In this document: piece by piece, positions 949-64,000 of the stretch
Position numbering within the stretch: the first letter of the stretch is position 1
Layout: each line of letters begins with the position of its first letter
From: Octopus vulgaris
Taxonomy: Eukaryota
Assembly (NCBI GenBank): GCA_951406725.2
Contig: OX597818.1
Location: 94,984,001 to 95,048,000 of the forward strand
Reading direction: 5' to 3'
Length of the DNA stretch: 64,000 nucleotides
Made by a program: the position numbers and the translations under genes
The notes under the pieces: model-generated
What the model was told of the DNA's origin: nothing
Databases searched by the model: none
Seen by the model: only the letters and a program-made list of their open reading frames with translations

Positions 949-1493
949 ATAACAATTTAACAAATAAAACATATGCATACATACATACATATATGTACAT
1001 ACCTACATCTATATGTATATATACATGCATATATATATGAGTACAGGACGCCACAAATAAACGTAGAACACGAGAAACGAAAACATAAAAACAAACAAGG
1101 AAACGGACTTTTTTTAACAACGAAAAAACAGAGTACAAGACAAACAATACAAGGAATATTCCCCTTCATCAGCTGCCCCTGGTTCGACTCAATGCGTGTT
1201 TCGAAGGTAAGGGCAGTTTAACATGATCCGGCCGAAGCAACACGCATTGAGTCGAACCAGGGGCAGCTGATGAAAGGGAATATTCCTTGTATTGTTTGTC
1301 TTGTACTCTGTTTTTTTGTTGTTAAAAAAAGTCCGTTTCCTTGTTTGTTTTTATGTTTTCGTTTCTCGTTGTGTTCTACGTTTATTTGTGGCATCCTGTA
1401 CTCATATATATATGCATGTATATATACATATAGATGTAGGTATGTATATATATGTATGTATGTATGCATATGTTTTATTTGTTAAATTGTTAT
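949..1493. repeat. Long fold-back palindrome (arms 949-1200 and 1239-1493, 38-nt loop), probably PLE-terminus derived
   Basis: Arms are near-perfect reverse complements with only a few substitutions or indels; the ORF track shows mirrored ORFs on both strands. Confidence 0.9.
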
Positions 1494-6017: not shown

Positions 6018-6492
6018 CAGGGTTATTCAAAAAGAATGAACCAATTTCATTACACAAATTTTTCATAAGGAAAAGCTAAATCACAAGTATATATTCATAA
6101 TCAATTTGATAAGAGAATTCCTCCCGGACGTGTATCAGCATATCACAATCCACTGAGTTGATCACTGTTGTTATTTGATGTTTAAGGTCATTGAGGTTAG
6201 TGGGTAGGGGTGGAACATAAACACAATCTTTTACATAACCCCACAAGAAAAAAAATCATACATGGTGAGGTCTGGGGATCTTGTAGACCAAGCACAAAGA
6301 GTGTCTGGGAGGAATTCTCTTATTGTATTGATGTTACCCTTGCTGCAGGTAGTAGCCACAATGAACACTTGTAAGACAGGAAATAAAAGTTGGTTGTGAG
6401 TAAATTCTTGTGACTTAACTGGAGTTTTCTGTTGCTTTTCCTTATTAAAATACTGCATAGTAAAATAGGTATATTCTTTTTGAATAACCCTG
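6018..6492 (-). mobile_element. Internally deleted Tc1/mariner (maT/DD37D-like) element
   Basis: Perfect 20-bp TIRs cagggttattcaaaaagaat with TA flanks; remnant AWSTRSPDLTMYDFF resembles WPPRSPDLTPCDFF. Confidence 0.85.
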
Positions 6493-6660: not shown

Positions 6661-6713
6661 TATAGAAGGAGCTTCTACAGGACTAGAACTGTTTCATTCA
6701 TGAAACAGTTCTA
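6661..6713 (-). mobile_element. 53-bp PLE terminal stub with 5' inversion, in a (TA)n tract
   Basis: 6661-6700 identical to 31877-31916, followed by an inverted copy (hairpin tagaactgtttcat-tc-atgaaacagttcta). Confidence 0.75.
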
Positions 6714-6739
6714 TATATATGTATGTATATAACAACATT

Positions 6740-7036
6740 CGAGCGAGGGTGTTGCCAGTGCCTCTGGACTGGCTCCTGTGCAGGTGACATATAAATACCA
6801 TTTGAGCGTGGCCATTGCCAGTACCGCCTGACTGGCCCTCGTGCCGGTGACCTATAAAAATACCCACTACACTCTCTGAGTGGTTAGCATTAGGAAGGGC
6901 ATCCAACTATAGAAACCCTGCCAGATCAGATTGGAGCCTGGTGCAGCCATCTGGTTCAACAGTCCCCAGTCAAACCGTCCAACCCATGCCAGCATGGAAA
7001 GCGGACGTTAAACGATGATGATGATGATGATGATGA
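6740..7036 (+). mobile_element. RTE 3' UTR-derived or SINE copy with (GAT)n tail
   Basis: Reverse complement of the RTE 3' UTR at 33688-33900; ends aacgatgatgatgatg. Confidence 0.8.
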
Positions 7037-7296
7037 TATATGTATGTATATTTGTGTGTGTGTATATATGTTGGTGTAGAATAGATATACTATTAAATTA
7101 GTATCTAATTCTCTCACCCTTATTAATTAATTATAATTATGCTGCATTTATTTCTAAATGCTGTATTTGTTTTCCGTGAAAGTTTGACGCGCTGTTAGTT
7201 GGGGCATTTGAATTATAACGTCGGATGTAATCAATTGAACCACACGCGTATTTATCGTTATGGTAAAATCTGGCGTGTGATTGAGTGGATTTCATC

Positions 7297-7392
7297 CAGA
7301 TAGTTTTGGCTGAAGAGCTACAAGTGGATTTTATTGTAAGTAAAATTACATTTAATTCATTAATAGCGAAACAATTGTCCCAAAATAATCTG
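7297..7392 (+). ncRNA. Type I hammerhead ribozyme, copy 1 (predicted cleavage after C7379)
   Basis: Stem I cagatagttttgg/ccaaaataatctg; core CUGAAGA at 7310-7316; stem II GCUA/UAGC with an extended hairpin; GAAA; stem III AC-AAUU-GU; GUC cleavage triplet. Confidence 0.9.
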
Positions 7393-7829
7393 TATTTGTT
7401 ATTTTTTATTTGCCCTGTCCGTGTGAGCTAACAATCGTACTGACTTTCATGGGAAACATGTATTTTTGTGGTTGAAACCTTTTGGATTAACTGGTGCTAG
7501 AGTGAGCCATATAGTGACCATTCTCTTATATTTATTTTGTAAAAATATTATAATATATTATAAAATATTATAATAATCCAGGTTTCTCGAAGCACTAGGC
7601 CACTTGGTGTAGAATAGATATACTATTAAATTAGTATCTAATTCTCTCACCCTTATTAATTAATTATAATTATGCTGCATTTATTTCTAAATGCTGTATT
7701 TGTTTTCCGTGAAAGTTTGGCGCGCTGTAAGTTGGGGCATTTGAATTATAACGTCGGATGTAATCAATTGAACCACACGCGTATTTATCGTTATGGTAAA
7801 ATCTGGCGTGTGATTGAGTGGATTTCATC

Positions 7830-7925
7830 CAGATAGTTTTGGCTGAAGAGCTACAAGTGGATTTTATTGTAAGTAAAATTACATTTAATTCATTAATAGC
7901 GAAACAATTGTCCCAAAATAATCTG
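7830..7925 (+). ncRNA. Type I hammerhead ribozyme, copy 2 (predicted cleavage after C7912)
   Basis: Identical to copy 1, offset +533. Confidence 0.9.
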
Positions 7926-8362
7926 TATTTGTTATTTTTTATTTGCCCTGTCCGTGTGAGCTAACAATCGTACTGACTTTCATGGGAAACATGTATTTTT
8001 GTGGTTGAAACCTTTTGGATTAACTGGTGCTAGAGTGAGCCATATAGTGACCACTCTCTTATATTTATTTTGTAAAAATATTATAATATATTATAAAATA
8101 TTATAATAATCCAGGTTTCTCGAAGCACTAGGCCACTTGGTGTAGAATAGATATACTATTAAATTAGTATCTAATTCTCTCACCCTTATTAATTAATTAT
8201 AATTATGCTGCATTTATTTCTAAATGCTGTATTTGTTTTCCGTGAAAGTTTGACGCGCTGTTAGTTGGGGCATTTGAATTATAACGTCGGATGTAATCAA
8301 TTGAACCACACGCGTATTTATCGTTATGGTAAAATCTGGCGTGTGATTGAGTGGATTTCATC

Positions 8363-8458
8363 CAGATAGTTTTGGCTGAAGAGCTACAAGTGGATTTTAT
8401 TGTAAGTAAAATTACATTTAATTCATTAATAGCGAAACAATTGTCCCAAAATAATCTG
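8363..8458 (+). ncRNA. Type I hammerhead ribozyme, copy 3 (predicted cleavage after C8445)
   Basis: Identical to copy 1, offset +1066. Confidence 0.9.
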
Positions 8459-8597
8459 TATTTGTTATTTTTTATTTGCCCTGTCCGTGTGAGCTAACAA
8501 TCGTACTGACTTTCATGGGAAACATGTATTTTTGTGGTTGAAACCTTTTGGATTAACTGGTGCTAGAGTGAGCCATATAGTGACCACTCTCTTATAT

Positions 8598-8649
<52 letters not shown>

Positions 8650-8930
8650 ATATATAAGGCAAATGGAGAGGATATAAAATCAACAAACATCAGCCAGTAA
8701 ACATTCCATTATATCTATTTATTAAATGTTAACAAACATGTATTTTAAGTGGCACAAGTAAACGAATGAGATCAGCCAATAGATAGGTAAATGGATATAT
8801 ATAGAGAGAGATGAATGAATAATAATAGATGAGTGTACAGATACATATATACAGATATATATTTGTGCTTATATATATTTATATATATGTATGTATATAT
8901 AAATGTGTGTATATATACATATATATATAT

Positions 8931-9105: not shown

Positions 9106-9363
9106 ATATATATAATTATTATTTGAGGGAATAAAATCCAAACTTATAAGGAAAAACAATTCAATTTAGAAATACTAAACCTATTATATACATTATATTA
9201 TTCTTGTAATTTACTTAATCTTTTCTTTTTAATTGTTATTTTGATTTTAACTTTTCTATTATATGTAATTTTCTAGATGGTGTAATTTAATTATTCATTT
9301 TGAACTGATAAAAGGTGGGTTTTTTCTAATATTTTATATATATATATGTAGATGTGTTATATA

Positions 9364-9754
9364 TGCAGATGTGTTACCAGTGCCGGTGGCATGTAAGAGA
9401 ACCATCCGTTCGTGACCGTTGCCAGCGCCGCCCCGACTGGCCTTGTGCCGGTGGCATGTAAAAAGCACCATCCGTTCGTGTCCGTTGCCAGCCCCGCCTG
9501 GCCCCCGTGCCGGTGGCACATAAAAAGCACCATCCGTTCGTGGCCGTTTGCCAGCTCTGTCTGGCACCTGTGCAGGTGGCACGTAAAACGCACCCACTAC
9601 ACTCTCGGAGTGGTTGGCGTTAGGAAGGGCATCCAGCCATAGAAACACTGCCAGATCTGACTAGGCCTGATGAAGCCTTCTGGCTTCACAGACCTCAGTT
9701 GAACCGTCCAACCCATGCTAGCATGGAAGACGGACGCTAAACGATGATGATGAT
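9364..9754 (+). mobile_element. RTE 3' UTR-derived copy with internal ~55-bp repeats and (GAT)n tail
   Basis: Reverse complement of 33690-34050. Confidence 0.85.
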
Positions 9755-10659: not shown

Positions 10660-11832
10660 GTATATATATAAAATAGACATTAATTACAGGACACCACCAA
10701 TGGGCAAAAAACACATAAACATACAAGAGACAAGTACACAATATAATACCAAAAAATATACAATAAGAACAGGACATCAACAATGAGCAAAAAACATAAC
10801 ACATAACGAGAGACAAGTATGGGACAAAATAGTCTAACTCCTTGTCAGTTGTTAACTATTTATTACTCCTTGTTTCGAGCTTTCAGTTGGAGGTTAAAAT
10901 AGCCTCATTAAGGGATAGTAATATCCAATGAATTACTGGTTCATTGCCTAGTATTTTTTGTGAATAATAATATTCATAAAATAATAGGTCTAAATATAAA
11001 TCTTGGTTTATAAGTATTCAATAGGAAATTTAGAAAATGGAGCATTAATATGATTTATTATCTTCAAAAATACAACATACTTTCTTATGAATATATATCT
11101 ATTATGTAAAATCCGTTCTGTCTGCCTAGGATCTCGGGCATCCTCCATCCGATTGTGCTCAAATTTGATATGTAGATACCAACAGTATCAGGGCATGTAT
11201 AAGTCTTGAAAAAATTACAAAAATCGATTCCAGGTGAGAATGCGATTGATAAAGCCGTGGGAACGTGCAAGTAAATCAGCTGTTGTGATCAATACTACAC
11301 GTATGCGAGAAAAATGCACGTGCAGTTTGTGCAAAAAAAGCCAGCTGGCTTGAAATAATGCCACAAAATGCAGTATATTTAAGAGACCAAAAAAGTAAGA
11401 TATATATATATTTTTTTTATCTTTTACTTGTTTTAGTCATTAGACTGTGGCCATGCTGGAGCATTTCCTTCAAGAATTTTTTGTCAAATGTATCAACCCC
11501 AGTACTTATGTTTTTTTTTCAAAGCCTGGTACTTATTATATTGGACTCTTGTGCTGAACTGCTAAGTTATGGGGATGTAAACACACCAACATCAGTTGTC
11601 AAATGGTGTCAGAGGACAAACAAACACACACACACATATTTTCTGGGTTTTCACATTAATGTCTCAGATCTCATCAAGCATCTAGTCAAGAAGCCCAAAT
11701 GTTGGTATGAGCACTGGCACTGCTAACACATTGTGGGTCACTCTTTTATTGAATGCAGAGAGCTCTGGGTCCAAATTTTCTTTATTCAGCTGCTATACTC
11801 TTTAAAGACATGTGTTTTGTTACAGGTGCCAT

Positions 11833-11888
11833 TGTATGTGTGTGTGTGCATGTATGTATGTATGTATGTATGTATGTATGTATGTATG

Positions 11889-11919
<31 letters not shown>

Positions 11920-13110
11920 GTAAGTAAGTGAGTAAGTAAGTAAGTAAGTAAGTAAGTAAGCAAGCAAGAAAGAGAGCAAGCGAGCAAGCAAGCAAGCACT
12001 TACTTGCTTGCTTTCTTTCTTGCTTTCTTGCTTGCTTGCTTGCTTGCTTGATTTTTTGCTTGCTTGCTTGCTTACTTCCTTACTTACTTACTTACTTGCT
12101 TGCTTGCTTACTTACTTTCTTACTTGCTTGCTTGCTACATTGCTTGCTTAATTGTGTACTTACTTACTTGCTTGCTTACTTGCTTGCTTGCTTACTTACT
12201 TACATACTTGCTTGGTTGCGTGCTTGCTTGCTTGCTTGCTTACTTACTTACTTTCTTGCTTGCTTACTTGCTTGCTTACTTACTTACTTACATACTTACT
12301 TACGTGCTTACTTACTTACTTACATGCTTGGTTGGTTGGTTGCTTGCTTGCTTAATTACTTGCTTGTTTGCTTACATATTTACTTGCTCGTTTGCTTGCT
12401 TGCTTGTTTGCTTGATTGCTTACTTACGTGCTTGCTTGCTTGCTTACTTACTTACTTACTTAAATACTTACTTACTTGCTTACTTATTGACTTACTTGCT
12501 TGTTTGGTTGGTTGCTTGCTTGCTTGCTTACTTACTTACTTGCTTGATTGCTTGCTTACTTACTTGCTTGCTTGCTTGGTTACTTACTTAATTACTTGCT
12601 TGCTTACGTGCTTGCTTGCTTACTTGCTTGCATACTTGATTGCTTGCTTGCTTGCTTACTTACTTCTTTAAATACTTGCTTACTTAATAACTTACTTGCT
12701 TGCTTGCTTGCTTGCTTATATATTTACTTGCTTACTTACTTGCTTGCTTACTTGATTGCTTGCTTACTTACTTACTTACTTACTTGCATACTTACTTACT
12801 TACTTACTTATTTACCTACTTGCTTACATACTTAGTTACTTGCTTGGTTGCTTGCTTGTGTATTTACTTACTTAATTAATTGCTTGCTTGCTTGCTTAAT
12901 TACTTACTTGCTTGCTTGCTTGCTTACTTACTTACTTAATTACTTGCTTGCTTACTTATATCCTTGCTTGATTGCTTGCTTGCTTACTTACTTATTTATT
13001 TACTTACTTGCATGCTTGCTTGCTTGCTTGCTTACTTACTTACTTGCATGCTTGCTTGCTTGCTTGCGTGCCTGCTAACTACCTTACTTACTTACTTACA
13101 TACTTACTTA
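11833..13110. repeat. Compound tetranucleotide array (TATG)n-(TAAG/CAAG)n-(CTTG/CTTA)n
   Basis: Direct inspection; the motif switches strand near 11998. Confidence 0.95.
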
Positions 13111-13444
13111 TTTTTGTACAAGTTTTTACCAAATATTGTTCTTTTCCATACTGAAAATTTATTAATCATATATATGTATATTATATATGTATATATATAT
13201 GTCAGTTGGATGGATGGATGGAAGAATGGATGGATGGATGGATGGATGGATGGACGGTCGGACGGACGGACAAAATGCCTGTTAGAAATTATTTGTGTTT
13301 AAATTTGGATGGATGGATGGATGGATAGGTGGATGGATGGGTGGATGGATGGGTGGATGGATGGATGGATGGATGGATGGATGGAGGGATGGGTGGATGG
13401 GTGAATTTGTTGAGTTTATAGGGTGGATGGGTGAATTTGTACAG

Positions 13445-14206
13445 TTTATAGGGTGCTAAACATTTTTGGTATGCAAATTAGGGACTCCTTCATAGAATAA
13501 CTGCTGTATGTGTTGAGAATATATAGAGTTTATAGAGCGGTTAAACATTTTCGGTATGCAAATTAGGGATTACTTCATAGAATAACTGCTGCGTTTGTTG
13601 AGTATTTAAACAGTTTTTAAAGTGTTAAACATTTAAAGTATGCAAGGTCGGGACTTCTACATAGAATAACTGCTGTATTTGTTGAGTATATATAGAGTTT
13701 ATAGAGCGGGTAACATATTCAGTATGCAAATTAGGGACTCCTGCATAGAATAACTGCTGTATTTGTTGAGTATATATAGAGTTTATAGAGTGCTTAAACA
13801 TATTCAGCATGCAAATTAGGGATTACTTCATAGAATAACTGCTGCATTTGTTGAGTATTTAAACAATTTATAAAGTGTTAAACATTTACGGTATGCAGAT
13901 CCGGGACTCCTGTAAAGAATAACTGCTGTATTTGTTGAGTATATATAGAGTTTAAAGAGCAGTTGAAAATTTTCAGTATGCAAATTAGGGACTCCAGCAT
14001 AGAATTAACGGCTGTATGTGTTGAGTATATATAGAGTTTATAGAGCAGTTGAAAATTTTCGGAATGAAAATTAGGGACTCCGGCATAGAATAAATTCTGT
14101 ATTTGTTGAGTATATATAGAGTTTATAGAACGGTTTAGATTTTCGGTATGCAAATTAGAGACTCCGGCATGGAATAAATTCTGTATTTGTTGAGTGAGTA
14201 TGTATG

Positions 14207-14240
<34 letters not shown>

Positions 14241-14580
14241 TGTATGTATGTATGTATATATGTATGTACGGATGTATGGATGGATGGATGGACGGATGAA
14301 CGGACAGACGGACGGACGGACTGATGGATGGATGGATTTTATAGAACAATTTTAATTTTCGGTATGCAAATTAGGGACTCCGGCATAGAATAAATTCTGT
14401 ATTTGTGGAGTATATATAGGGTTTATACAACGGTTTCATTTTTCGGTATGCAAATTAGGGACTCCGGCATAGAATAAATTCTGTATATGTTGAGTATATA
14501 TCGAGATTATAGAACAGTTTTAATTTTCGGTATGCAAATTAGGCACTCCGGCATAGAATAAATTCTGTATTTGTTGAGTA
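13445..14580. repeat. Minisatellite, 84-86-bp period, about 12 diverged units, interrupted by a TATG/GGAT microsatellite at ~14195-14340
   Basis: atgcaaatt anchors at 13471, 13556, 13640, 13724, 13809, 13893, 13978, 14064, 14148, then 14364, 14448 and 14532. Confidence 0.9.
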
Positions 14581-14589
14581 TATATATAG

Positions 14590-16601
14590 ATGGATGGATG
14601 GATGGATGGACGGACGGACGGATGGACGGATGGATGTTTAGATGGATGGATAGGTGGATGGAATAGGTGGATGGATGGATGACTAGATGGATGTGTGGAT
14701 TGATGGATGGACGGATGGATCGATGGATGGAGGGATGGACGGACAGACAGATGGACGGGCGGAAGGCAGGATGGGCAGACGGATGAATGGATAGATGGTT
14801 GGATGAATGAATGTGTGGGTGGTTGGGTGGGTGGATGGATGGGCAGACGGATGAATGGATAGATGGAGTGGATGTGTGGATGGATAGATGGACGGATGGA
14901 TGGTTGGATGGGTGGACCGATGGATGGATGGATGGATGGTTGGATGGGTGGGTGGGAGCATGGATGGAAGGATGATGGATGAGTGGGTTGATGGATGGAT
15001 AAAGGAATGAAGGGATGGATGGATGGATGGGTTGGTTGGTGTATATTTGGATGGCTGGCTGACTGGCTGGCTGGATGGATGAATGGTTGGATAGACGGAT
15101 GAATGGATGGACGGACGGATGGACGGATGAACGGATGGACGGACAGACGGATGGACGGGCGGACGAATGGACAGATAGATGGATGAATGGGTGGAAGGAT
15201 GGATGGATTGTCGGATAGACGGATGGACAGTTGGATGGATGGATGGATGGATGGACGGATTGACGGATGGATGGATGGATGGACTGTCGGTCAAATGGAC
15301 GGATGGATGGATAGACTGTCGGTCAAATGGACGGATGGATGGACAGATGGACGGACGGATGGATGGATGAGTTGGTACTTGCTTGCTTGCTTAGTTACTT
15401 ACTTGCATGCTTGCTTTCTTACTTACTTACTTACTTACTTGCTTGCTTACTTTCTTGCTTGCTTTCTTACTTACTTACTTGCTTATTGCTTACTTGATTG
15501 CTTGCTTGCCTACTTACTTACTTGCTTTCTTGCTTCCTTGCTTGATTGCTTACTTACTGACTTACTTACTTGTTGCTTACTTACTTACTTCCTTGTTTGA
15601 TTGATTGCTTGCTTACTTGCTTGCTTGCTTTCTTGCTTGCTTGCTTTCTTGCATGCTCGCTTACTTACGTAGTTACTTACTTATTTGCTTACTTGCTTAC
15701 TTACTTAATTACTTACTTGCTTGCTTTCTTGCTTGCTTACTTGCTTGCTTGCTTGCTTGCTTACTTGCTTGCTTGCTTGCTTGCTTACTTACTTGCTTGC
15801 TTGCTAACTTGCTTGCTTACTTACTTACTTGCTTACTTACTTGCTTGTTTGCTTGCTTGCTTGCTTCCTTGCTTGCTTGCTTCCTTGCTTGCTTACTGAC
15901 TTACTTACTTGTTTGCTTGCTTGCTTGCTCGCTTACTTACTGACTTACTTACTTACTTGTTGCTTACTTACTTACTTCCTTGTTTGATTGCTTGCTTGCT
16001 TACTTGCTTGCTTGCTTTCTTGCTTGCTTGCTTTCTTGCATGCTTGCTTGCATGCTCGCTTACTTACGTAGTTACTTACTTATTTGCTTACTTGCTTGCT
16101 TGCTTTCTTGAATGCTTGCTTGCATGCTCGCTTACTTACGTAGTTACTTACTTATTTGCTTACTTGCTTGCTTGCTTACTTACTTAATTACTTACTTGCT
16201 TGCTTGCTTGCTTTCTTGCTTGCTTTCTTGCTTGCTTACTTGTTTGCTTGTTTACTTGCTTGTTTGCTTACTTTCTTACTTACTTGCTTACTTGCTTGCT
16301 TGCTTGCTTACTTACTTACTTGCTTGCTCGCTAACTTGCTTGCTTACTTACTTACTTGCTTGCTTACTTACTTGCTTGTTTGCTTGCTTGCTTGCTTCCT
16401 TGCATGCTTACTGACTTACTTACTTGTTTGCTTGCTTGCTTGCTCGCTTACTTACTTACTTACTTACTTACTTGCTTGCTTGCTTGCTTGATTGCTTGCT
16501 TGCTTACTTACTTTTTGTACAAATTTTTACCAAATATTTTTATTTTCCATCCCGAATATTTATTAATTATATATATGTATACTATATATGGATATATATT
16601 A

Positions 16602-16655
<54 letters not shown>

Positions 16656-17250
16656 AGTAGGATGGATGGATGGATTGATGGATGGATGGATGGATGGATG
16701 GATGGATGGACAGACGGACGGATGGACGAATGGACGGATGGACGGATAGATGGACAGACGGACGGATGGATGGATGGATGAATGGATGGATGGATTGATG
16801 GATGGATGGGCGGATGGATGTGTGGATGGATGGATGGATGGATGGGTGGGCTGGTGGATGGATGGATGGATGGATGGGTGGATGGATGTGTAGATGGATG
16901 GACAGATGGACGGACGGACGGATGGCTGGATGGATGGATGGACAGGTGGATGGAGGGGTGGATGGATGGGTGGATGAATGGATGGATGGGTGGGTGGATG
17001 GATGGATGGATTGGTTGTTGGATGGATAGATGGATGGATGGGTGGGTGGTTGGATGGATGTAAGTAAGGATGTAAGTGAGTGTGTGAGTGATTGAGTGAA
17101 TGAGTGAGTGATTGAGAGTGAGTGAGTGAGTGAATGAGTGATTGAGTGAGTGAGTGAGTGAGTGAGTGAGTGAGTGAGTGAATGAGTGATTGTGTGAGTG
17201 AGTGAGTGAGTGAGTGAGTGAGTGAGTGTGTGTATGTGCGTGTGTGTGTA
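14590..17250. repeat. Compound microsatellite block (GGAT)n-(CTTG/CTTA)n-spacer-(GGAT)n-(GAGT)n
   Basis: Direct inspection; spacer 16512-16660 is a diverged copy of 13111-13208. Confidence 0.9.
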
Positions 17251-17675
17251 TGTGTGTGTGTATCAGCAGGCTGTAGAAGCATTGCTGAATACATATTTCT
17301 GCTTCTTTGAGCTTCATCGGTAGCAAATATCTATTGGCCTTGCATGCTTCATGAAAATCAGTCACTAAATTATATAGTTAAATAGTGACTGAAAAGTTAT
17401 TGATACACATCTAGCTGATAGATTGAATAAAAATTTGATATCTGTAACTTTTCAATTACTATCTGTATCAGTTAGTGGCCAATTTTCATATGGTGACAAT
17501 GGATATTTATTGGAAGTGGTGATAGTGTAAGTAGTAATGATGCAAGTGACAATGTTGGTAATAGTGGTGGTGGAGGTGATTTGAGGTGGGGAGGATTTGT
17601 GATGTTAGGAATGTAGCTATGTTTGTTTAATCCTATTGTGGGCACATTTGTCTTGAAATATGCTACCCTTGTTTT

Positions 17676-33687: not shown

Positions 33688-35437
33688 TCATCATCATCAT
33701 CATCATCATTTAGCGTCCGTTTTCCATGCTAGCATGGGTTGGACGGTTCTGCTGGGGTCTGTGAAGCCAGAAGGCTTCATCAGGCCCAGTCAAATCTGGC
33801 AGTGTTTCTACGGCTGGATGCCCTTCCTAACGCCAACCACTCCGTGAGTGTAGTGGGTGCTTTTTACGTGCCACCCGCACTGGTGCCAGCCAGAGCTGGC
33901 AAACGGCCACGAACGGATGGTGTTTTTTATGTGCCACCGGCACGAGGGCCAGGCGAGGCTGGCAACGAACACGAAATGGGGCGGTGCTGGCAACGGTCGC
34001 GAAACGGAAGGTTCTCTTACATGCCACCGGCACTGGTAACACATCTGCAATTTCCATTGATCGATTTCCATTGATCGATTTCGATTCTGATCCTCACTTG
34101 CCTCAATGGGTCTTCACAAGCAGAGTTTCGACATGCCACCGGCACTGGTAGCACATCCGCAATTTCCATTGATCGATTTCGATTCTGATCCTCACTTGCC
34201 TCAACACGTCTTCACAAGTAGAGTTTTGTGTCCCAAGAAGGGAAGGTATGCATACGTAGGCTGGCTCCATCCCATGTAGAAGGCCACGGGTTGTGGACTC
34301 ACTTGTCCTGCCGGGTCTTCTCGCGCACAGCACACTTCCAGAGGTCTCGGTCTCTAGTCATTTCCTCGGTGAGACCTAAAGTTCGAAGGTCGTGCTTCAC
34401 CACCTCGTCCCAGGTTTTCCTGGGTCTGCCTCTTCCACAGGTTCCCTCAACCGCTAGGGTGTGGCACTTTTTCACACAACTATCTTCATCCATTCTCGCC
34501 ACATGACCATACCAGCGCAAACGTCTCTCTTGCACACCACAACTGATGCTTCTTAGGTCCAGCTTTTCTCTCAAGGTACTTACACTCTGCCGAGTGTGAG
34601 TACTGGCATTACACATCCATCGGAGCATACTGGCTTCATTTCTAGCGAGCTTACGCATATCCTCAGCAGTCACGGCCCATGTTTCACTGCCATGTAGCAT
34701 GGCTGTTCGTACACACGCATCATACAGTCTGCCTTTCACTCTGTGCGAGAGGCCTTTTGTCACCAGCAGAGGTAAGAGCTCTCTGAACTTTGCCCAAGCT
34801 ATTCTTACTCTAGCAGTTACACTTTCAGCACACCCGCCCCCGCTGCTGACTTGGTCACCTAGGTAACGGAAACTATCAACTATTTCTAGTTTTTCTCCCT
34901 GGAAAGTGACAGAAGTTGGTCTCAGAGCATTTTCAGTGTTTATTGTTCCTGAGCATCTGCCACATACAAAAACCATCTTCCTAGTTAGCCTTCCTTTGAC
35001 ATTGCTGCATCTCTTATGTGTCCATAGCTTACACTTGGTGCATCTTATAGAGTTTCTACCTACACCTTTTCTACAGATCGAGCAGGGCCATCTACCTGAA
35101 GGTGTTTGTGATTTGTCTACCTTCCTACTGATTACGACTTTGGTTTTAGCTAGATTGACTCTGAGGCCCTTCGATTCTAATCCTTGTTTCCACACCTGAA
35201 ACTTCTCCTCCAGTTCTGATAGCGACTCAGCAATTAGAGCAAGGTCATCAGCATAGAGGAGCTCCCAAGGGCATCCTGTCTTGAATTCCTCCGTTATTGA
35301 CTGGAGGACTATGATAAATAGGAGGGGGCTGAGTACTGAGCCTTGGTGGACCCCTACCTCTACCCGGAATTCTTCACTGTACTCATTTCCAACCCTCACC
35401 CTACTAGCGGCGTCCCTATACATGGCCCGCACAGCTC

Positions 35438-35441
<4 letters not shown>
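33688..35441 (-). mobile_element. 5'-truncated RTE-clade LINE with 3' UTR and (GAT)n tail
   Basis: Uninterrupted RT C-terminal frame, 3' UTR at 34298-33709, tail at 33688-33708; 5' end fused to (TA)n. Confidence 0.92.
34299..35441 (-). CDS. RTE reverse transcriptase, C-terminal 380 aa (partial)
   Basis: [25 protein letters not shown] and RGRPRKTW motifs with no stops. The ORF-track N-terminus (35442-35624) is microsatellite. Confidence 0.9.
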
Positions 35442-35489
<48 letters not shown>

Positions 35490-35558
35490 CATATATACAC
35501 ATATATATACACACACACACATACATACATATATATATATATATACACACACACACAT

Positions 35559-35595
<37 letters not shown>

Positions 35596-35774
35596 CTTAC
35601 ACACATGTACATATAAATACACACATAGATAACTCTACGTACCTACATATACATAAACACACGAGCGTACGCGTATATGTACATATACACATACACACGC
35701 ATATATATACATACATACATACACATACACACATGTATACACACACACACACATACACATATATATACATACAC

Positions 35775-38723: not shown

Positions 38724-41560
38724 CTTAGATTGGTTTGGGCCACTATCAGCCCAGGCCATGACTAACTCAATAGCACCACCTGGAAATGTCTTTTGGTTTA
38801 TTATTTTGGGACATCATGGGCCACTCAAGCAGAAAGTTGTTGTTGGTTGAGACATATCAAGGTGTAAGTGGTTTATATGGTATTTCCTGGAGGAATTTGT
38901 CCAGGTACCATTTGAAAGTTGTGGGTGCTTTTTCATCTTCAAATTCTTTTGGGATAACATTAGAAAGAGCAGGACCATTTGCAGTGAAGAAATTGTGTCA
39001 CAATGTTCTTATGTGATGTGATCTTGACCTTTGTAGGGGACGCATTGCACAGGGGCCTATTCTTGGGTGAATTGCAAATATAATACTAATATCATTTGGA
39101 TAATATTGGTAGAATATTTTCCACATGATGCAAATAATGTATTGCTCATGGCGGCATTGCAGAGAATAGTTTCAGCTGTTTAAGTTGAGCCCAATAATGA
39201 AGTCCCATCAGGCCATTTATTTTTTTAGTGATTGATCTTTGTGGTGCTTCAATCTTTATTATGTCCTTTTTTTTTTTTGTAGGGGGACCACAATGAGCAG
39301 CAATATTCGAGGTGAGACATTGCAAATGTGGAGAAGAGAAGGATGATGGCTTCATGATCTATCCATGAGCACATTCTGCGAGCAACATCGACTTTTTTGT
39401 TGATGTGTACACTTCAGCTAAAGTTGCTGTCAACAGTTACACCTAAGTCTCTGATATTATTTGACGGTTCAAGTAGTTCCCCCAACAGTAGTGTATATGG
39501 TTGTTTGAGTGTGTCCTCTTTTCCAAAGTAGATGAGCTCAAATTTATATTCGTTCAAATGCATATTGTTTCTTTGTGCCCACTGGGTTACTTCACATAGG
39601 TCCAATTGAAGCATCGTTCGATCATGTACTCCCTTAATGATTTTCTGGAGCTTAGAGACATCTGCAAATATCTTAATAGTGCTATGTTCAGTGGAATCTG
39701 CAATGTCATTGATATAGACAATAAAAAGAAGTGGACTCAGCACAGTACCCTGTGGGACTCCACTGATGACTTTTGCTAGTCTTGATGGATGCCATCAACC
39801 ACAACATGCTGGGTCCTGTTTGTTTGGAAATACCTAATCCATTGAAGTAGCTTTTCACTGACTCCAGCATTGGATAGTTTCCTTAACAGTATATTGTGGC
39901 TGACTCTGTCAAAGGCCTTGCTGAAATCAAGGTATATGACATCCATGTTGACATCCACTTAGTGCATTTAAGATGTCATCAAAATAGTGGAGGAGCTGTG
40001 ATAGACAGTCCCTCCCACCACGAAAGCCATGCTGGTTGCAATTTAGATGATTTTGTTCTAGAAAGGCTATTATTCTTGATCTCAACACTCTCTCAAATAC
40101 TTTGATGATATGTGAGGTGAGTGAGATTGAACAGTAGTTTACTGGGAGTGATTTATTCTCTTTTTTAAAGATATGAATGACTGACTGGGAGAGAAGGTTT
40201 TGAGAGATAAAACTGACATACAGTGATTTCCTCCAGAGATTTGCAAGAGAAGCTGCAAGTTGCTGTCTGCATTCCTTCAGCACTCTAGCAGGGAACCTGT
40301 CAGGACCCACTGCTGAATCGGGTTTGATTTTTTTTATTGCTGCTAGGATATCAGTGGCATTGAAGGTTATGTTGGAAAGGACAATGCTGAAGATTCAAAG
40401 AAGCAAAGCTGCTTCAGTCATCTGAATCAGGGTCATTGAAAGCAGAGCAGTATTGACTTTGCAGGATCTCAGCCATATCTATGGCATTACTGTGAAGGAT
40501 GCCATTTCCATCAACTAGTGGGCCGATAGAGGAAACTGGTCCTATGTGTTTTTTTGCAAAGGAGTAAAAGACCTTAGGATTATTCTTGATGTTTTTAATA
40601 GCCCAGGCTTCCTCTGTAGCTCTTTGGTCATTCACAAGAGTCCTCCTACAGTCCTGGAGTTGTTGCTTCTTTGATTCCAAGGTAGTTATACTCAAATAGT
40701 TGCCATGCGTTTGTGTTTGTTGTGGTATTAGAAGAAGCAAGGGTGAAGGACCAGACCACTTGCGATAAGTCTTGAGTGATCCCACTCCAGTTTGACTTGT
40801 GTAAATTCATATTATCAAATGGGTGCACAGGAGTTTGTGATTTATCCCAAATTTTTGGATGCTGAAGATTGAGGTTACAGAGTACTATGTCATGATTGGA
40901 CAGGAGTTTTTTTTCTACTGTGATGCTATGAATAGTGTTAGCATGGTTGCTTAGCACTAGGTCCAGGACACTTTGATTGTTTCTGGTTGGTTCATGGACG
41001 AGTTGTGACAGGAAAAATTTATCAACAATTTTAAAAGTAACTCTACTGTAGCTTTGTCTGAGCTTGAGGTGAAGGTTCTTGGTCTAACAATATTAGTGGA
41101 CCAATCTACAGAATATTTCATCAGAATATTTCATGGGTTACATTGCAGGAGGAAAGATTTGATCTTCCCGAGGCACTCTTGGAAATAATGTAAGGGTGCT
41201 TGTGGGGGTCTGTAGAGCCCAATCACAGACAGGTCTTTAACCTTGTTGTGAACAGAGACTGATTCACAACAGCCATTGGAGAAAATGTCCTTGGCATCAG
41301 TGCTGAAAATAGGAAAATAGCAGCTTCACCCTTTCTTTGGCCTGCCTGATCAGCGCGAATGGCAGTGAAGTCTCTGATTTTCAGTTCAGCCTCTAAATGA
41401 CAGTCATTTAGGTGGGTCCCAATTAGGACAAAGAAAGGAATTGGATGTGAGTGTGCTGCAATCCATCTCTCAATGCAGGGTATTTTCCATTTTTGAGCTG
41501 GGTTGATACCTTGGACATTAAGGGAGGAATGTCATTGTTAAGGCAGCAGCTTCGTTGCAT
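38722..41560 (-). mobile_element. Decayed CR1-clade LINE (APE endonuclease + RT), many frameshifts
   Basis: LNVQGINP (APE start), [53 protein letters not shown], and C-terminal FKWYLDKFLQEIP..P. Confidence 0.9.
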
Positions 41561-43837: not shown

Positions 43838-45055
43838 TTGGGTCATCCCATAAATAATGCAGTTTTTGCAATTGCATGAACTAAAAGTTGGAAGGGAATG
43901 GGATAAACTACCTGTATCGACTTGCTATAAAAGCAGATAGTATTTTCATCTTGTTCTTATTCTTCATGCAAGTTTTGAAGAGTGAATTTCAATTTCAAGT
44001 TATTTACTCAAAGCTATAATGGAAGTGACAAAGGAACATCGGCATATTTAGCTTTATGAGTGGAAAAAAAGGCAACATCTCAATGGAAAGTGTGAGGAAT
44101 ATTAATGCAGTATATAGGGATTGGACAACAAGTGTAAGTCAGTGTCAATGGTGGTTCCAGAAATTCCAAGCCAGAAACTGCAATCTAGAAGACAAGCCTC
44201 ATCCTGGAAGATCTGTAGAGCTTGACAAGGATGTCCTGCAAACCCTGGTGGAACATAATCTCATCATAACTGTTGAGAAACTAGCAGAAAAGCTTGAATT
44301 TGGTCATTCAACCATTCATCAACACCTGCATGCCATTGGAAAAGTCAGCAAATTGGGTCAATGGGTTCCTCATAAACTTTCTGAGTCTAATCACATGCAG
44401 AGAATGAATGTATGCTCTTCTTTGCTGTCATGTCTCACAAATGAACCTTTTTAGGACCAAGTAGTGACTGGTGATGAGAAATGGGTTCTCTATGAAAATG
44501 TCAAGTACCAAAGACACTGGGTAGGGAAAAGGAGAAACACCGGTACCCCAGGCTAAAGAAGGTCTTCACCTACATGTGTTGTTATTTGTTTGTTGGGATA
44601 TGAAAGGTTTAGTCCACTTTGAACTTTTAAAACCAAACCAAATGATAACAAAGACCTACTGTGAACACCTTAAGTCACTGCTAGAAGGAAAATGACCATC
44701 ATTGGTTTCAAGACGAAAGGTGTTCTTCCATTAGGATAATGCTTGGCCACATACAGCAAGGCCGACATTCCAAAAGCTGGAACAGTTTGAATGGGAATCA
44801 TTTATTCCGCACTTTTCAAAATCATTTGGATGGAAAAAATATGAATTCTGTAGACGAGGTCAGAACAATACTCGAGGAGTATTTTTCATCACAGACAAGT
44901 GAATTTTGGAAGAGGGGCCTTACAAGTCTACCAGATAGATGGAAGAGCATTGTAGAAAATGAAGGTGAGTATATTTTAGATTAAAAAAGAACTTTATCGT
45001 AATTTTGAAAAATAAAAGAAGTATAAAAAAATGCATTATTTATGGGATCACCCTA
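43838..45055 (+). mobile_element. Near full-length decayed mariner (1218 bp)
   Basis: ~30-bp TIRs gggt(c/g)atcccataaataatgca; transposase at ~44026-44984 with WVPHKL, VTGDEKW and DNAWPH, plus stops and a deletion. Confidence 0.92.
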
Positions 45056-53700: not shown

Positions 53701-53800
53701 NNNNNNNNNNNNNNNNNNNNNNNNNNNNNNNNNNNNNNNNNNNNNNNNNNNNNNNNNNNNNNNNNNNNNNNNNNNNNNNNNNNNNNNNNNNNNNNNNNNN
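53701..53800. other. Assembly gap (100 N)
   Basis: Run of n. Confidence 1.
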
Positions 53801-60372
<6,572 letters not shown>

Positions 60373-60917
60373 TAATACTTAAAGATAAAATAAATTACTT
60401 TGTTGAAATTATATATATATGTATATATATATATGTATGTATATATGTGTATATATATGTGTATATATATGTGTGTATATATATGTGTGTATATATATGT
60501 GTGTATATATATGTGTATATATATGTGTATATATATGTATATATATATATATGTATATGTATATATATATATATGTATGTATATATGTATATTTAACACC
60601 CACTTTTCCATACTTGCGTAGGCCAGACGGAGTTTAATTGAGCCAAACTTTCTACAGCTGGGATGCTCTTCCTGTTGTTAACCTTCGTTTGTTTCCATTC
60701 AAGTTAATATTTTCCCATGGCCAGACATGTTTTTGAAGAACATTGGAAATAAATAACACTGCTTGTATGACAGTGACAACCATTTACAACTAACATGCAA
60801 TGTCAAGGCAAGGAGACGAAAACACAAACTTACACATGCACGTGTGCAATGGGCTTCTTTTAGTTTCTGTCAGCCAGATCCATTCACAAGGCTTTGGTCA
60901 GCCCAAGGCTTTAAGTA

Positions 60918-63504: not shown

Positions 63505-64000
63505 ATCATCATTGTCATTTAATGTCTGCTTTCCATGCTGGCATGGGTTGGGCGGTTTGACTGAGGACTGGTGAGCCAGAAGGCTGCACTAAGCTCCAAT
63601 CTGATCAGGTAAAGTTTCTACAGCTGGATGCTCTTCTTAGCGCCAACCACTCCGTGAGTGTAGTGGGTGCTTTTATGTGCCACTGGCACAAGGGCCAGTC
63701 AGGCGGTACTGGCAACAACCACGCTCAAAAGTTGTTTTTACAGGCCACCTGCATGGGAGCCAGTCTGGCGGCACTGGCAACGACCATGCTCAAATGTTGT
63801 TTCTCACGTGCCAGTAAGGCGATGCTGGCCCAGCACAAGGGCCAGTCAGGTGGTACTGTCAACAACCACGCTCAAAAGGTGTTTTTTACATGCCACCTGC
63901 ACAGGAGCCAGTCCGGCAGCACTGGCAACGACCATGCTCGAATGTTGTTTTCCACGTGCAACTGGCACATGCGCCAGTGAGGCGACAGTGCCAACGATCA
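63505..64000 (-). mobile_element. RTE 3' UTR-derived or SINE copy with expanded internal ~60-bp repeats
   Basis: Same family as 33690-34050; at least five internal repeat units; runs off the window end. Confidence 0.75.

What the first reader, a model, noticed from the sequence alone, without database searches (positions are those of the whole stretch)
7071..8604. Tandem 533-bp hammerhead units: a candidate cephalopod retrozyme / circular RNA system
Seen: three near-identical non-coding 533-bp units (three differences by eye), each with a complete type I hammerhead on the + strand. Cleavage at all sites would release exact 533-nt monomers 7380-7912 and 7913-8445. Established: non-LTR retrozymes are tandem genomic arrays of hammerhead units; their transcripts self-cleave to monomers that circularise, and they are thought to be retrotransposed in trans by PLE RT. 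From memory, described animal monomers are usually shorter (roughly 170-400 nt). Inference: this is a young, possibly undescribed long-monomer family in an octopus-like genome; novelty is not verified.
Basis: partly seen in the sequence, partly recalled or inferred. Interest (0 to 1): 0.92.

Follow-up and report, generated by a model that had tools for sequence, protein, structure and literature searches.

The report
Octopus tandem hammerhead-ribozyme repeat (retrozyme-like)
A short, very young tandem array of a 533-bp non-coding repeat in an octopus genome carries a complete self-cleaving hammerhead ribozyme motif in every unit. This is the known animal "retrozyme" design, which makes small circular RNAs, so it is a new example of a known kind and not a new kind of system.

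Summary
Window 7071-8604 is 2.88 head-to-tail units of 533 bp that differ at only three positions. Each unit has a complete type I hammerhead ribozyme (HHR) on the + strand, with predicted cleavage after C7379, C7912 and C8445. That would release two exact 533-nt monomers.

The motif is not chance. My descriptor finds only these three sites in the window, none in 100 shuffles, and 2 in 60 Mb of random sequence. Rfam Hammerhead_1 aligns end to end (29.1 bits, gathering score 34, E 7.8e-6) once the search is narrowed.

Helix III is 2 bp plus a tetraloop inside the palindrome ACAAUUGU. Two copies co-fold into the classic double hammerhead. The monomer RNA is highly structured (z about -5.6 to -6) and leaves the HHR formed.

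The host is an Octopus. The window contains no Penelope-like element (PLE).

The best reading is a non-LTR retrozyme-type element. The "unusually long monomer" claim fails, because HHR repeats of 463-505 bp and 51-972 bp are already published. The one unusual feature is a 51-nt helix II.

Copy number in the genome, transcription, cleavage, circularisation and any link to a PLE could not be tested here.

The parts
7071..8604 (+). Tandem array: 2.88 units of 533 bp. In cleavage-site numbering it runs 225-533, 1-533, 1-533, 1-159.
   Evidence: spacing 533/533, three variable positions, register lost at 7070 and 8605
7297..7392 (+). Hammerhead copy 1. Helix I inner 7303-7309/7380-7386 and outer 7297-7301/7388-7392 (A7302 x A7387 mismatch). 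C3-A9 = CUGAAGA 7310-7316. Helix II 7317-7367. G12A13A14 7368-7370. Helix III A7371-U7378 and C7372-G7377, loop AAUU. C17 = C7379 (cleavage 7379|7380).
   Evidence: Rfam RF00163 aligned 7304-7385, model 1-45/45, 29.1 bits, E 7.8e-6
7830..7925 (+). Hammerhead copy 2, identical sequence; cleavage 7912|7913
8363..8458 (+). Hammerhead copy 3, identical sequence; cleavage 8445|8446
7380..7912 (+). Predicted 533-nt monomer A, between cleavage sites 1 and 2
   Evidence: Linear fold -150.2 kcal/mol, z -5.96. Circular fold -143.5 kcal/mol, z -5.6, 65% paired, HHR helices I and II present in the MFE.
7913..8445 (+). Predicted 533-nt monomer B, between cleavage sites 2 and 3. It differs from A at three positions: 8253 vs 7720, 8262 vs 7729, and 8054 vs 7521.
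7317..7367 (+). Extended helix II: a 51-nt hairpin with 4 closing pairs starting G10.1-C11.1, a 2x2 internal loop, an 8-bp stem and a 5-bp stem. Repeated at 7850-7900 and 8383-8433.
   Evidence: -12.6 kcal/mol alone; Rfam treats 39 nt of it as an insertion in loop 2
7371..7378 (+). Palindrome ACAATTGT, which is helix III plus its loop. Two copies can form an 8-bp intermolecular helix III (double hammerhead). Repeated at 7904-7911 and 8437-8444.
   Evidence: co-fold of two copies -56.6 vs 2 x -24.0 kcal/mol; the duplex alone is -6.4
7527..7577 (+). AT-only tract of the unit (one G). Repeated at 8060-8110. The array's 3' end (8593-8604) lies at the start of this tract and runs into (TA)n.
7014..7070 (.). 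Left flank: (GAT)8 tail of a SINE-like repeat, then TG/TA low-complexity sequence abutting the array
8605..8656 (.). Right flank: (TA)n microsatellite abutting the array
7047..7069 (.). Possible target-site duplication TATATTTGT(GT)nATATAT; partner at 8641-8655. Low complexity, so only suggestive.
   Evidence: shared 9-mers TATATTTGT and TGTATATAT in the same order on both sides

Best explanation
The locus is a young insertion of a non-autonomous, hammerhead-bearing tandem repeat of the non-LTR retrozyme type, in an Octopus genome.

Proposed mechanism:
1. The + strand is transcribed through the array. This is inferred. A T6 run and a T5 run in each unit argue against RNA polymerase III, and the + strand has no AATAAA.
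2. Each HHR has a marginal helix III (2 bp plus a tetraloop). Neighbouring HHRs in the multimeric transcript therefore pair through the ACAAUUGU palindrome into a double hammerhead. This is shown in silico only.
3. [quoted passage not shown] The geometry is shown; the chemistry follows from what is established for HHRs.
4. A host RtcB-type tRNA ligase circularises the monomers into stable, highly base-paired circles. This is inferred from Cervera & de la Pena 2020.
5. A Penelope-like element RT/GIY-YIG endonuclease, supplied in trans, copies the circle or a multimer. It inserts a multimeric cDNA at AT-rich or microsatellite DNA and so creates arrays such as this one. This is a literature hypothesis. 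Here it fits the non-integer unit number, the microsatellite flanks and the near-identity of the units.
For: - Array and identity.
- Complete HHR core and helices.
- Rfam Hammerhead_1 full-length alignment, E 7.8e-6.
- Chance expectation about 0.004 per window for a much weaker descriptor.
- Double-hammerhead co-fold gains 8.6 kcal/mol over two monomers.
- Forming helix III in a single copy costs +1.0 kcal/mol.
- Monomer fold z -5.96 (linear) and -5.6 (circular), with HHR helices I and II kept in the MFE. Published animal retrozyme circles behave the same way.
- The + strand folds 38 kcal/mol better than the - strand.
- GC is 31.9%, there is no start-codon ORF above 54 aa, and no protein relatives were found.
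- No HHR or other Rfam ribozyme on the - strand.
- The array is 2.88 units long, starts and ends at unrelated positions of the unit, and is flanked by microsatellites with a possible TSD.
- PLE endonucleases prefer AT-rich or microsatellite targets: PMC11167929, PMC8557442.
- The host is Octopus. O. vulgaris has 30 recently active Penelope families.
- Three private substitutions in 1534 bp (0.2%) imply roughly 0.5 My, using JC 0.09 = 25 My. This is my own arithmetic and is a lower bound if the units are being homogenised.
Against: - No second locus of the unit was found. Nothing in the window, nothing in the metagenome, viral or prokaryote collections, and no related predicted protein among 1.84 billion representatives. 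Family status and mobility are therefore unproven, and no cephalopod genome could be searched.
- The three HHRs are copies of one event, so there is no covariation evidence.
- The Rfam score is 5 bits below the gathering score, and the whole-window scans miss the motif.
- A 51-nt helix II is atypical. It might disturb the helix I / helix II tertiary contact needed for fast cleavage.
- There is no PLE in the window.
- There are no expression data.
- Microsatellites are so common in this window that the flanks are weak evidence.
Confidence: 0.7

Rival explanations
1. The unit is the pseudo-LTR (pLTR) / terminal region of an autonomous octopus Penelope-like element. This locus would be an ORF-less partial-tandem remnant of that element and not an independent non-autonomous family.
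For: - PLEs carry type I HHRs with minimal or palindromic helix III in their pLTRs, and they insert as partial tandems (PMC4209133; PMC8557442).
- In Xenopus nearly every non-LTR retrozyme family is sister to a PLE pLTR.
- Octopus has recently active Penelope families.
- PLE HHRs tend to have a longer helix II (7-8 bp) than canonical ones.
Against: - No RT or GIY-YIG coding sequence lies next to the array or anywhere in the 64-kb window. The only RT-like pieces are LINE-type, 27 kb or more away. tblastn with the Anolis Poseidon protein gives only E = 6 noise.
- Three consecutive ORF-less units are what defines a retrozyme array.
- The two readings are not exclusive, since a retrozyme may derive from a pLTR.
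Confidence: 0.17
2. It is an ordinary local tandem triplication (a minisatellite made by slippage or unequal crossing-over). Its hammerhead-like motif would be fortuitous or a dead relic, with no RNA processing.
For: - There is only one locus and only 2.9 units.
- The three HHRs are not independent.
- The Rfam score is below the gathering score.
- The window is full of tandem and simple repeats.
- No relatives were retrieved.
Against: - The full motif matches all 11 invariant core positions and has a G10.1-C11.1 pair, a 7+5-bp helix I and an 8-nt palindromic helix III. A far weaker descriptor is expected about 180 times in 2 x 2.7 Gb. My rough multiplication puts the extra features well below one chance occurrence per genome.
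- The motif sits in exactly the context where real ones occur: a tandem, non-coding, low-GC repeat.
- The monomer has an exceptional fold energy, and the fold keeps the HHR.
- A simple in situ duplication predicts a whole number of units. The array is 2.88 units, and the last 65 nt of the unit are missing from its 3' end.
Confidence: 0.08
3. It is an outlying fragment of a true HHR satellite DNA, of the newt satellite 2 or cricket pDo500 type. That satellite would form long arrays elsewhere (for example pericentromeric) and spread mainly by recombination, not retrotransposition.
For: - Unit length and design match pDo500: 463-505 bp, an HHR, and a proposed double-hammerhead mechanism.
- In Xenopus, multimer arrays concentrate near chromosome ends and centres.
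Against: - This array has only 2.9 units and is embedded among interspersed repeats.
- Published octopus repeat surveys that I could search mention no such satellite.
- The classical HHR satellites have themselves been reinterpreted as retrozymes, so the distinction is largely semantic.
Confidence: 0.05

Closest known systems
Non-LTR retrozymes of metazoans (Cervera & de la Pena 2020, PMC7229834): Mytilus galloprovincialis ~350-390 bp, Acropora millepora 220-240 bp, axolotl 330/350 bp
   Same: - Head-to-tail non-coding repeats of low GC, each with one type I HHR in the same polarity.
- No LTRs.
- Arrays range from dimers upward.
- The monomer RNA is predicted to be highly self-paired, with the HHR free to fold.
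- Helix III of 2 bp plus a tetraloop, as in axolotl HHR_Amex2 and the invertebrate motifs.
- A mollusc host is already known (the mussel).
   Different: - The monomer is 533 nt, against the 170-400 nt quoted in that paper. It is inside the 51-972 bp range reported later.
- Helix II is a 51-nt interrupted hairpin where the usual form is about 4 bp plus a loop.
- Expression, circles and genomic copy number are untested here.
- I found no cephalopod example in the literature.
Double-hammerhead satellites: newt/salamander satellite 2 and Dolichopoda pDo500 (PMC2837043)
   Same: - Satellite-like unit with an HHR. pDo500 units are 463-505 bp, essentially the size seen here.
- Processing of multimeric transcripts to monomers.
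- A weak helix III and a proposed two-copy (dimeric) active form.
   Different: - Those repeats form very large arrays (about 5% of a cricket genome; over 100,000 motifs in axolotl). This locus has 2.9 units.
- There is no sequence similarity.
- The pDo500 HHR is a compact 49-68 nt, against about 82-96 nt here.
min-HHRs in pLTRs of Penelope-like elements (Cervera & de la Pena 2014, PMC4209133)
   Same: - Type I HHR.
- Minimal or palindromic helix III that implies action as a dimer.
- Helix II longer than usual.
- Tandem or partial-tandem organisation.
- Preference for AT-rich or microsatellite targets.
   Different: - No RT-GIY-YIG ORF is associated with the units in this window.
- This helix I is long (7+5 bp), where PLE min-HHRs have 4-5 bp.
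- This motif has a real, if weak, helix III.
Plant LTR retrozymes (Cervera et al. 2016, PMC4918200)
   Same: Non-autonomous retroelement logic: HHR self-cleavage gives 600-1000-nt circular RNAs, which are used as templates by an autonomous element's RT.
   Different: Plant elements have type III HHRs inside LTRs, a PBS and PPT, GC above 55%, 4-bp TSDs, and are mobilised by Gypsy-type elements. None of these features is seen here.

Membership tests
Hammerhead ribozyme, type I (Rfam RF00163) | Invariant core: C3 U4 G5 A6 N7 G8 A9, G12 A13 A14, A15.1-U16.1, H17 (not G) | tested here: met
   CUGAAGA 7310-7316, GAA 7368-7370, A7371-U7378, C7379; identical at +533 and +1066
Hammerhead ribozyme, type I (Rfam RF00163) | Three helices around the core, with helix I open-ended (type I) and a G10.1-C11.1 pair at the base of helix II | tested here: met
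   The MFE fold gives helix I (7+5 bp) and helix II. Helix III (2 bp) forms at a cost of +1.0 kcal/mol, or as an 8-bp duplex in the dimer.
Hammerhead ribozyme, type I (Rfam RF00163) | Covariance-model score at or above Rfam's gathering score (34 bits) | tested here: not met
   29.1 bits, full model 1-45/45, E 7.8e-6 for the 111-nt search. No hit in the whole-window or 1.9-kb scans. The shortfall comes from a 39-nt insertion in loop 2.
Hammerhead ribozyme, type I (Rfam RF00163) | Compensatory changes in the helices among diverged homologues | not testable with these tools
   The only copies available are the three near-identical units, and no relative was found.
Hammerhead ribozyme, type I (Rfam RF00163) | Site-specific self-cleavage | not testable with these tools
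   Needs in vitro transcription of monomeric and dimeric constructs.
Non-LTR retrozyme (metazoan) | Head-to-tail tandem repeats, each unit carrying a type I HHR in the same polarity | tested here: met
Non-LTR retrozyme (metazoan) | Non-coding, low GC (below 45-50%), no LTRs | tested here: met
   GC is 31.9%. The longest start-codon ORF is 54 aa, with no relatives. Only microsatellite repeats flank the array. PBS and PPT were not specifically searched.
Non-LTR retrozyme (metazoan) | Monomer size within the described range | tested here: met
   533 bp is outside the 150-450 bp of PMC7229834. It is inside the 51-972 bp of the 2026 vertebrate survey and close to pDo500.
Non-LTR retrozyme (metazoan) | Highly self-paired monomer RNA in which the HHR can still fold | tested here: met
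   z -5.96 (linear) and -5.6 (circular), 65% paired, helix I 7/7 and helix II 4/4 pairs present in the circular MFE
Non-LTR retrozyme (metazoan) | Multiple dispersed genomic loci (evidence of mobility), with TSDs longer than 4 bp when present | not testable with these tools
   This is the only locus in the window, and no cephalopod genome collection was available. A possible 15-23-bp low-complexity TSD is present.
Non-LTR retrozyme (metazoan) | Expressed as linear and circular monomer RNAs | not testable with these tools
   No transcriptome access.
Non-LTR retrozyme (metazoan) | Co-occurrence with autonomous PLEs in the same genome | tested here: inconclusive
   There is none in this window. 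The literature reports 30 recently active Penelope families in O. vulgaris. The exact species of the window is not known.
Penelope-like element (pLTR) | Repeat flanks or adjoins an ORF with a telomerase-like RT and a GIY-YIG endonuclease | tested here: not met
   No GIY-YIG or PLE-type RT was found in 90 open segments of the window, and there is no tblastn match to Poseidon_Ac.
HHR satellite DNA (newt satellite 2, pDo500) | Long homogeneous arrays making up a sizeable genome fraction | tested here: not met
   This locus has 2.88 units. The genome-wide situation is not testable.

The most novel reading that the evidence does not exclude
This is the first cephalopod member of the ribozyme-circRNA retroelements, and it is currently active (units 0.2% or less diverged). 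Its 533-nt circles are abundant in octopus tissues. Its hammerhead carries a functionally meaningful 51-nt helix II arm, for example a protein-binding or RT-recognition arm that replaces the usual loop 2. That would define a distinct HHR architecture below Rfam's threshold.
Probability: 0.2. Interest if true: 0.55.

Novelty: new member of a known kind. Interest (0 to 1): 0.35.

Why it matters
If confirmed, it adds cephalopods to the animals that make small circular RNAs through self-cleaving ribozymes. It also offers a very young, nearly error-free array (three substitutions in 1.5 kb). Such an array is useful for studying how these elements are copied and inserted: rolling-circle reverse transcription, use of a PLE in trans, and microsatellite targets.

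The extended helix II shows that standard Rfam scans at the gathering score, and even E-value scans of a few kb, miss real-looking hammerheads. Retrozyme censuses in AT-rich invertebrate genomes may therefore be undercounts.

It does not change the current picture of what retrozymes are.

Tried and rejected
1. Rfam at the gathering score on the whole window, and at E<=10 on 1.9 kb: no hammerhead. It appeared only when the search was narrowed to 111 nt.
2. Other copies of the unit in the window by blastn with word size 7: only low-complexity noise.
3. Exact look-up of eight unit-encoded ORFs among 15 billion proteins: none present.
4. phmmer of the 52-aa minus-strand ORF against 1.84 billion representatives: three hits, all unrelated highly repetitive proteins with inflated summed scores.
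5. HHR-specific DNA patterns. Metagenome contigs gave 0 and 0. Viral contigs gave 0. Prokaryote genomes gave 5 hits against about 2 expected by chance; none has helix I/II pairing or further similarity.
6. PLE in the neighbourhood. Pfam on 90 open segments found only LINE-type RT/APE pieces, a PHD finger and a mariner HTH. tblastn with the published Anolis Poseidon protein found nothing.
7. I considered reaching octopus PLEs through the search for homologous proteins with the Anolis protein. I dropped the idea because the 120 listed hits would be saturated by vertebrate copies.
8. Literature search for hammerheads or retrozymes in cephalopods, or for an octopus satellite of this size: nothing found.
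9. A ribozyme on the minus strand: none.
Full report
OBSERVATION

The sequence at 7071-8604 is a head-to-tail array with a 533-bp period. A base-by-base comparison shows 2.88 units that differ at only three positions: 7187/7720/8253 = A/G/A, 7196/7729/8262 = T/A/T, and 7521/8054/8587 = T/C/C. Periodicity stops exactly at 7070 and 8605. TRF did not report the array because its longest period is 500. The unit occurs nowhere else in the 64-kb window. Its GC content is 31.9%, against 33.4% for the window.

THE HAMMERHEAD

On the + strand each unit carries a complete type I hammerhead (HHR). In the first copy:
- Helix I: 7303-7309 pairs with 7380-7386. It is prolonged by 7297-7301/7388-7392 across an A x A mismatch.
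- Core, first part: C3-A9 = CUGAAGA at 7310-7316.
- Helix II: 7317-7367. It starts with G10.1-C11.1 and has 4 closing pairs, then a 2x2 internal loop and two further stems, 51 nt in all.
- Core, second part: G12A13A14 at 7368-7370.
- Helix III: A15.1-U16.1 (7371-7378) and C-G (7372-7377), closing an AAUU loop.
- Cleavage nucleotide: C17 = C7379.

The same motif recurs at +533 and +1066. All three variable positions lie outside the HHR.

IS IT CHANCE?

- A descriptor I wrote requires CUGANGA, helix II of 4 bp or more, GAAA, U-H within 2-12 nt, and helix I of 5 bp or more. It finds only these three sites on both strands of the window, and none in 100 dinucleotide-preserving shuffles.
- In 60 Mb of first-order Markov sequence with the window's composition it finds 2 hits. 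That is about 0.004 per window, or about 180 per 2 x 2.7 Gb.
- None of those random hits had a 7-bp helix I with a G10.1-C11.1 pair, or a palindromic helix III. By my rough multiplication, the motif as actually seen is expected well below once per genome.
- A relaxed descriptor adds no other site in the window.
- Rfam 15 gave no hit at the gathering score, nor at E<=10 over 1.9 kb. When the search was narrowed to 7290-7400, Hammerhead_1 (RF00163) aligned over its whole model (1-45/45) to 7304-7385. The score is 29.1 bits against a gathering score of 34, with E = 7.8e-6.
- The shortfall is due to a 39-nt insertion in loop 2. Scaled by my own arithmetic to the whole window, E is about 5e-3.
- The HHR assignment is therefore well supported by motif statistics. 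It rests on one evolutionary event and has no covariation support.

DIMERIC ARCHITECTURE

- Forming the 2-bp helix III in a single copy costs +1.0 kcal/mol (-22.7 vs -23.7).
- A15.1 to U16.1 reads ACAAUUGU, an 8-nt palindrome.
- RNAcofold of two copies gives, as its MFE, the textbook double hammerhead. It has an 8-bp intermolecular helix III and helices I formed in trans, at -56.6 kcal/mol against 2 x -24.0.
- This is the arrangement described for newt/axolotl, PLE and many invertebrate type I HHRs. They cleave poorly as single motifs and well as dimers (PMC4209133; PMC7229834; PMC3088659).

THE MONOMER RNA

- The linear 533-nt monomer folds to -150.2 kcal/mol (z = -5.96).
- As a circle it folds to -143.5 kcal/mol (z = -5.6) and is 65% paired. 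All 7 helix I pairs and the 4 closing helix II pairs are present in the MFE.
- The complementary strand folds to only -105.1 kcal/mol (z = -4.5). The + strand fold uses 20 G-U pairs.
- A highly self-paired circle in which the HHR remains free to fold is what Cervera & de la Pena report for most animal retrozymes.
- Each + strand unit contains a T6 run and a T5 run and no AATAAA. This argues, by inference, against polymerase III as the transcribing enzyme.

ENDS AND FLANKS

- In cleavage-site numbering the array runs 225-533, 1-533, 1-533, 1-159.
- Its 3' end falls at the start of the unit's AT-only tract (7527-7577 in unit 1) and continues as (TA)n at 8605-8656.
- Its 5' end abuts TG/TA low-complexity sequence that follows the (GAT)8 tail of a SINE-like repeat.
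- The 9-mers TATATTTGT and TGTATATAT occur in the same order on both sides (7047-7069 and 8641-8655). This may be a target-site duplication, but it is low-complexity sequence and only suggestive.
- A simple in situ duplication predicts a whole number of units. The missing last 65 nt fit better with insertion of a multimeric copy with arbitrary ends. Erosion by the microsatellite cannot be excluded.
- PLE endonucleases prefer AT-rich or microsatellite DNA. Microsatellites are so frequent in this window that this is weak support.
- Three private substitutions in 1534 bp (0.2%) correspond to roughly 0.5 My. I used the calibration JC 0.09 = 25 My quoted for octopus. This is my own arithmetic and is a lower bound if the units are being homogenised.

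SURROUNDINGS AND HOST

- A 441-aa ORF at 34299-35624 (-) carries RVT_1 plus a PHD finger. Its best named relatives are Octopus bimaculoides and O. vulgaris proteins at 83-85% identity. The window is therefore from an octopus.
- A second, frameshifted LINE-type element (weak APE plus RVT_1) lies at about 39.1-41.1 kb (-).
- A mariner HTH lies at 44.0-44.5 kb.
- None of the 90 open segments scanned has a GIY-YIG domain or a PLE-type RT. tblastn with the published Anolis Poseidon protein (PMC11167929 supplement) finds nothing.
- ORFs within 5 kb of the array are low-complexity or SINE artefacts.
- This locus is therefore not a PLE with an ORF.

SEARCH FOR RELATIVES

None of the collections available holds cephalopod DNA.
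- Exact look-up of unit ORFs, phmmer of the 52-aa ORF against 1.84 billion representatives, and pattern scans of metagenome and viral contigs found nothing.
- Five matches in prokaryote genomes are at the chance level and lack the helices.
- Family size, mobility and relation to a PLE pLTR therefore remain untested.

COMPARISON WITH WHAT IS KNOWN

- Animal non-LTR retrozymes are tandem, low-GC, non-coding repeats with type I HHRs. [quoted passage not shown] RtcB-type ligases circularise them, and PLEs are proposed as the mobilising partner (PMC7229834).
- A 2026 survey reports consensus lengths of 51-972 bp (mean 650 bp in ray-finned fishes). It finds that 75% of families have at most seven units per array, and that the repeats are phylogenetically related to PLE pLTRs.
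- The cricket HHR satellite pDo500 has 463-505-bp units and a proposed double-hammerhead mechanism.
- A 533-nt monomer is therefore not exceptional.
- The unusual features are the host group and the long helix II. I found no paper on hammerheads or retrozymes in cephalopods. The 51-nt helix II pushes the motif below Rfam's threshold.
- O. vulgaris is reported to hold 30 Penelope families with 329 recently active insertions, so a trans-acting partner is plausible.

MECHANISM (steps marked shown or inferred)

1. Transcription of the + strand through the array (inferred).
2. Pairing of neighbouring HHRs into a double hammerhead (shown in silico).
3. [quoted passage not shown]
4. Circularisation by a host tRNA ligase (inferred from PMC7229834).
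5. Reverse transcription of the circle or a multimer by a PLE RT, and insertion at AT-rich DNA as a multimeric cDNA (literature hypothesis, consistent with the array's ends, flanks and youth).

RIVALS

- ORF-less remnant of a PLE pLTR tandem: 0.17. This is not exclusive of the best explanation.
- Fortuitous or dead motif in a local triplication: 0.08.
- Outlier of a true HHR satellite: 0.05.

VERDICT

It is a new member of a known kind and not a new system. The length-based novelty claim does not hold. Interest is moderate to low (0.35). It would rise if a genome census and RNA data showed an active cephalopod family with abundant circles, and if the long helix II proved functional.

Noticed in passing
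window 949-1493: Near-perfect palindrome of about 250 bp: arms 949-1200 and 1239-1493, 98% complementary, 38-nt spacer. Mirrored ORFs lie on the two strands.
   Followed up: partly
window 11800-17300: Complex satellite block. Kilobase-scale tetranucleotide tracts, (CTTG)n at 11999-13076 and 15378-16513, (GATG)n at 14589-15369 and (GGAT)n at 16660-17060, bracket an 84-bp tandem array at 13443-14195 and 14338-14586.
   Followed up: no
window 53701-60592: A 100-N assembly gap (53701-53800) is followed by a 201-bp duplicated segment and a 6.7-kb (TA)n-like tract (53889-60592). The assembly is scaffolded, so repeat copy numbers nearby may be unreliable.
   Followed up: no
window 34299-35624 (-): Intact 441-aa ORF with the C-terminal half of RVT_1 plus a PHD finger. 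It is LINE-type, not PLE. It is 83-85% identical to Octopus bimaculoides and O. vulgaris proteins, and its upstream end runs into a 1-kb (TA)n tract.
   Followed up: partly
window 39149-41083 (-): Frameshifted non-LTR element: a weak Exo_endo_phos_2 match, then RVT_1 N- and C-terminal pieces in different frames.
   Followed up: partly
window 44029-44451 (+) and 6231-6458 (-): Mos1/mariner-type HTH ORF at 44.0-44.5 kb. By eye, a 75-aa ORF 600 bp left of the array ends like a mariner transposase C-terminus, but it has no Pfam hit.
   Followed up: partly
window 6690-7010, 9337-9660, 63561-63983: GC-rich SINE-like repeats in both orientations. The one at 9380-9594 contains a 62-bp unit repeated 3.4 times, and the one at 63686-63959 a 148-bp unit repeated 1.9 times.
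   Followed up: no
window 7290-7400: Method note. Infernal's filters lose this hammerhead when 1.9 kb or 64 kb are scanned, and it appears only in a 111-nt search. Hammerheads with long helix II insertions are probably under-detected in routine Rfam scans.
   Followed up: yes
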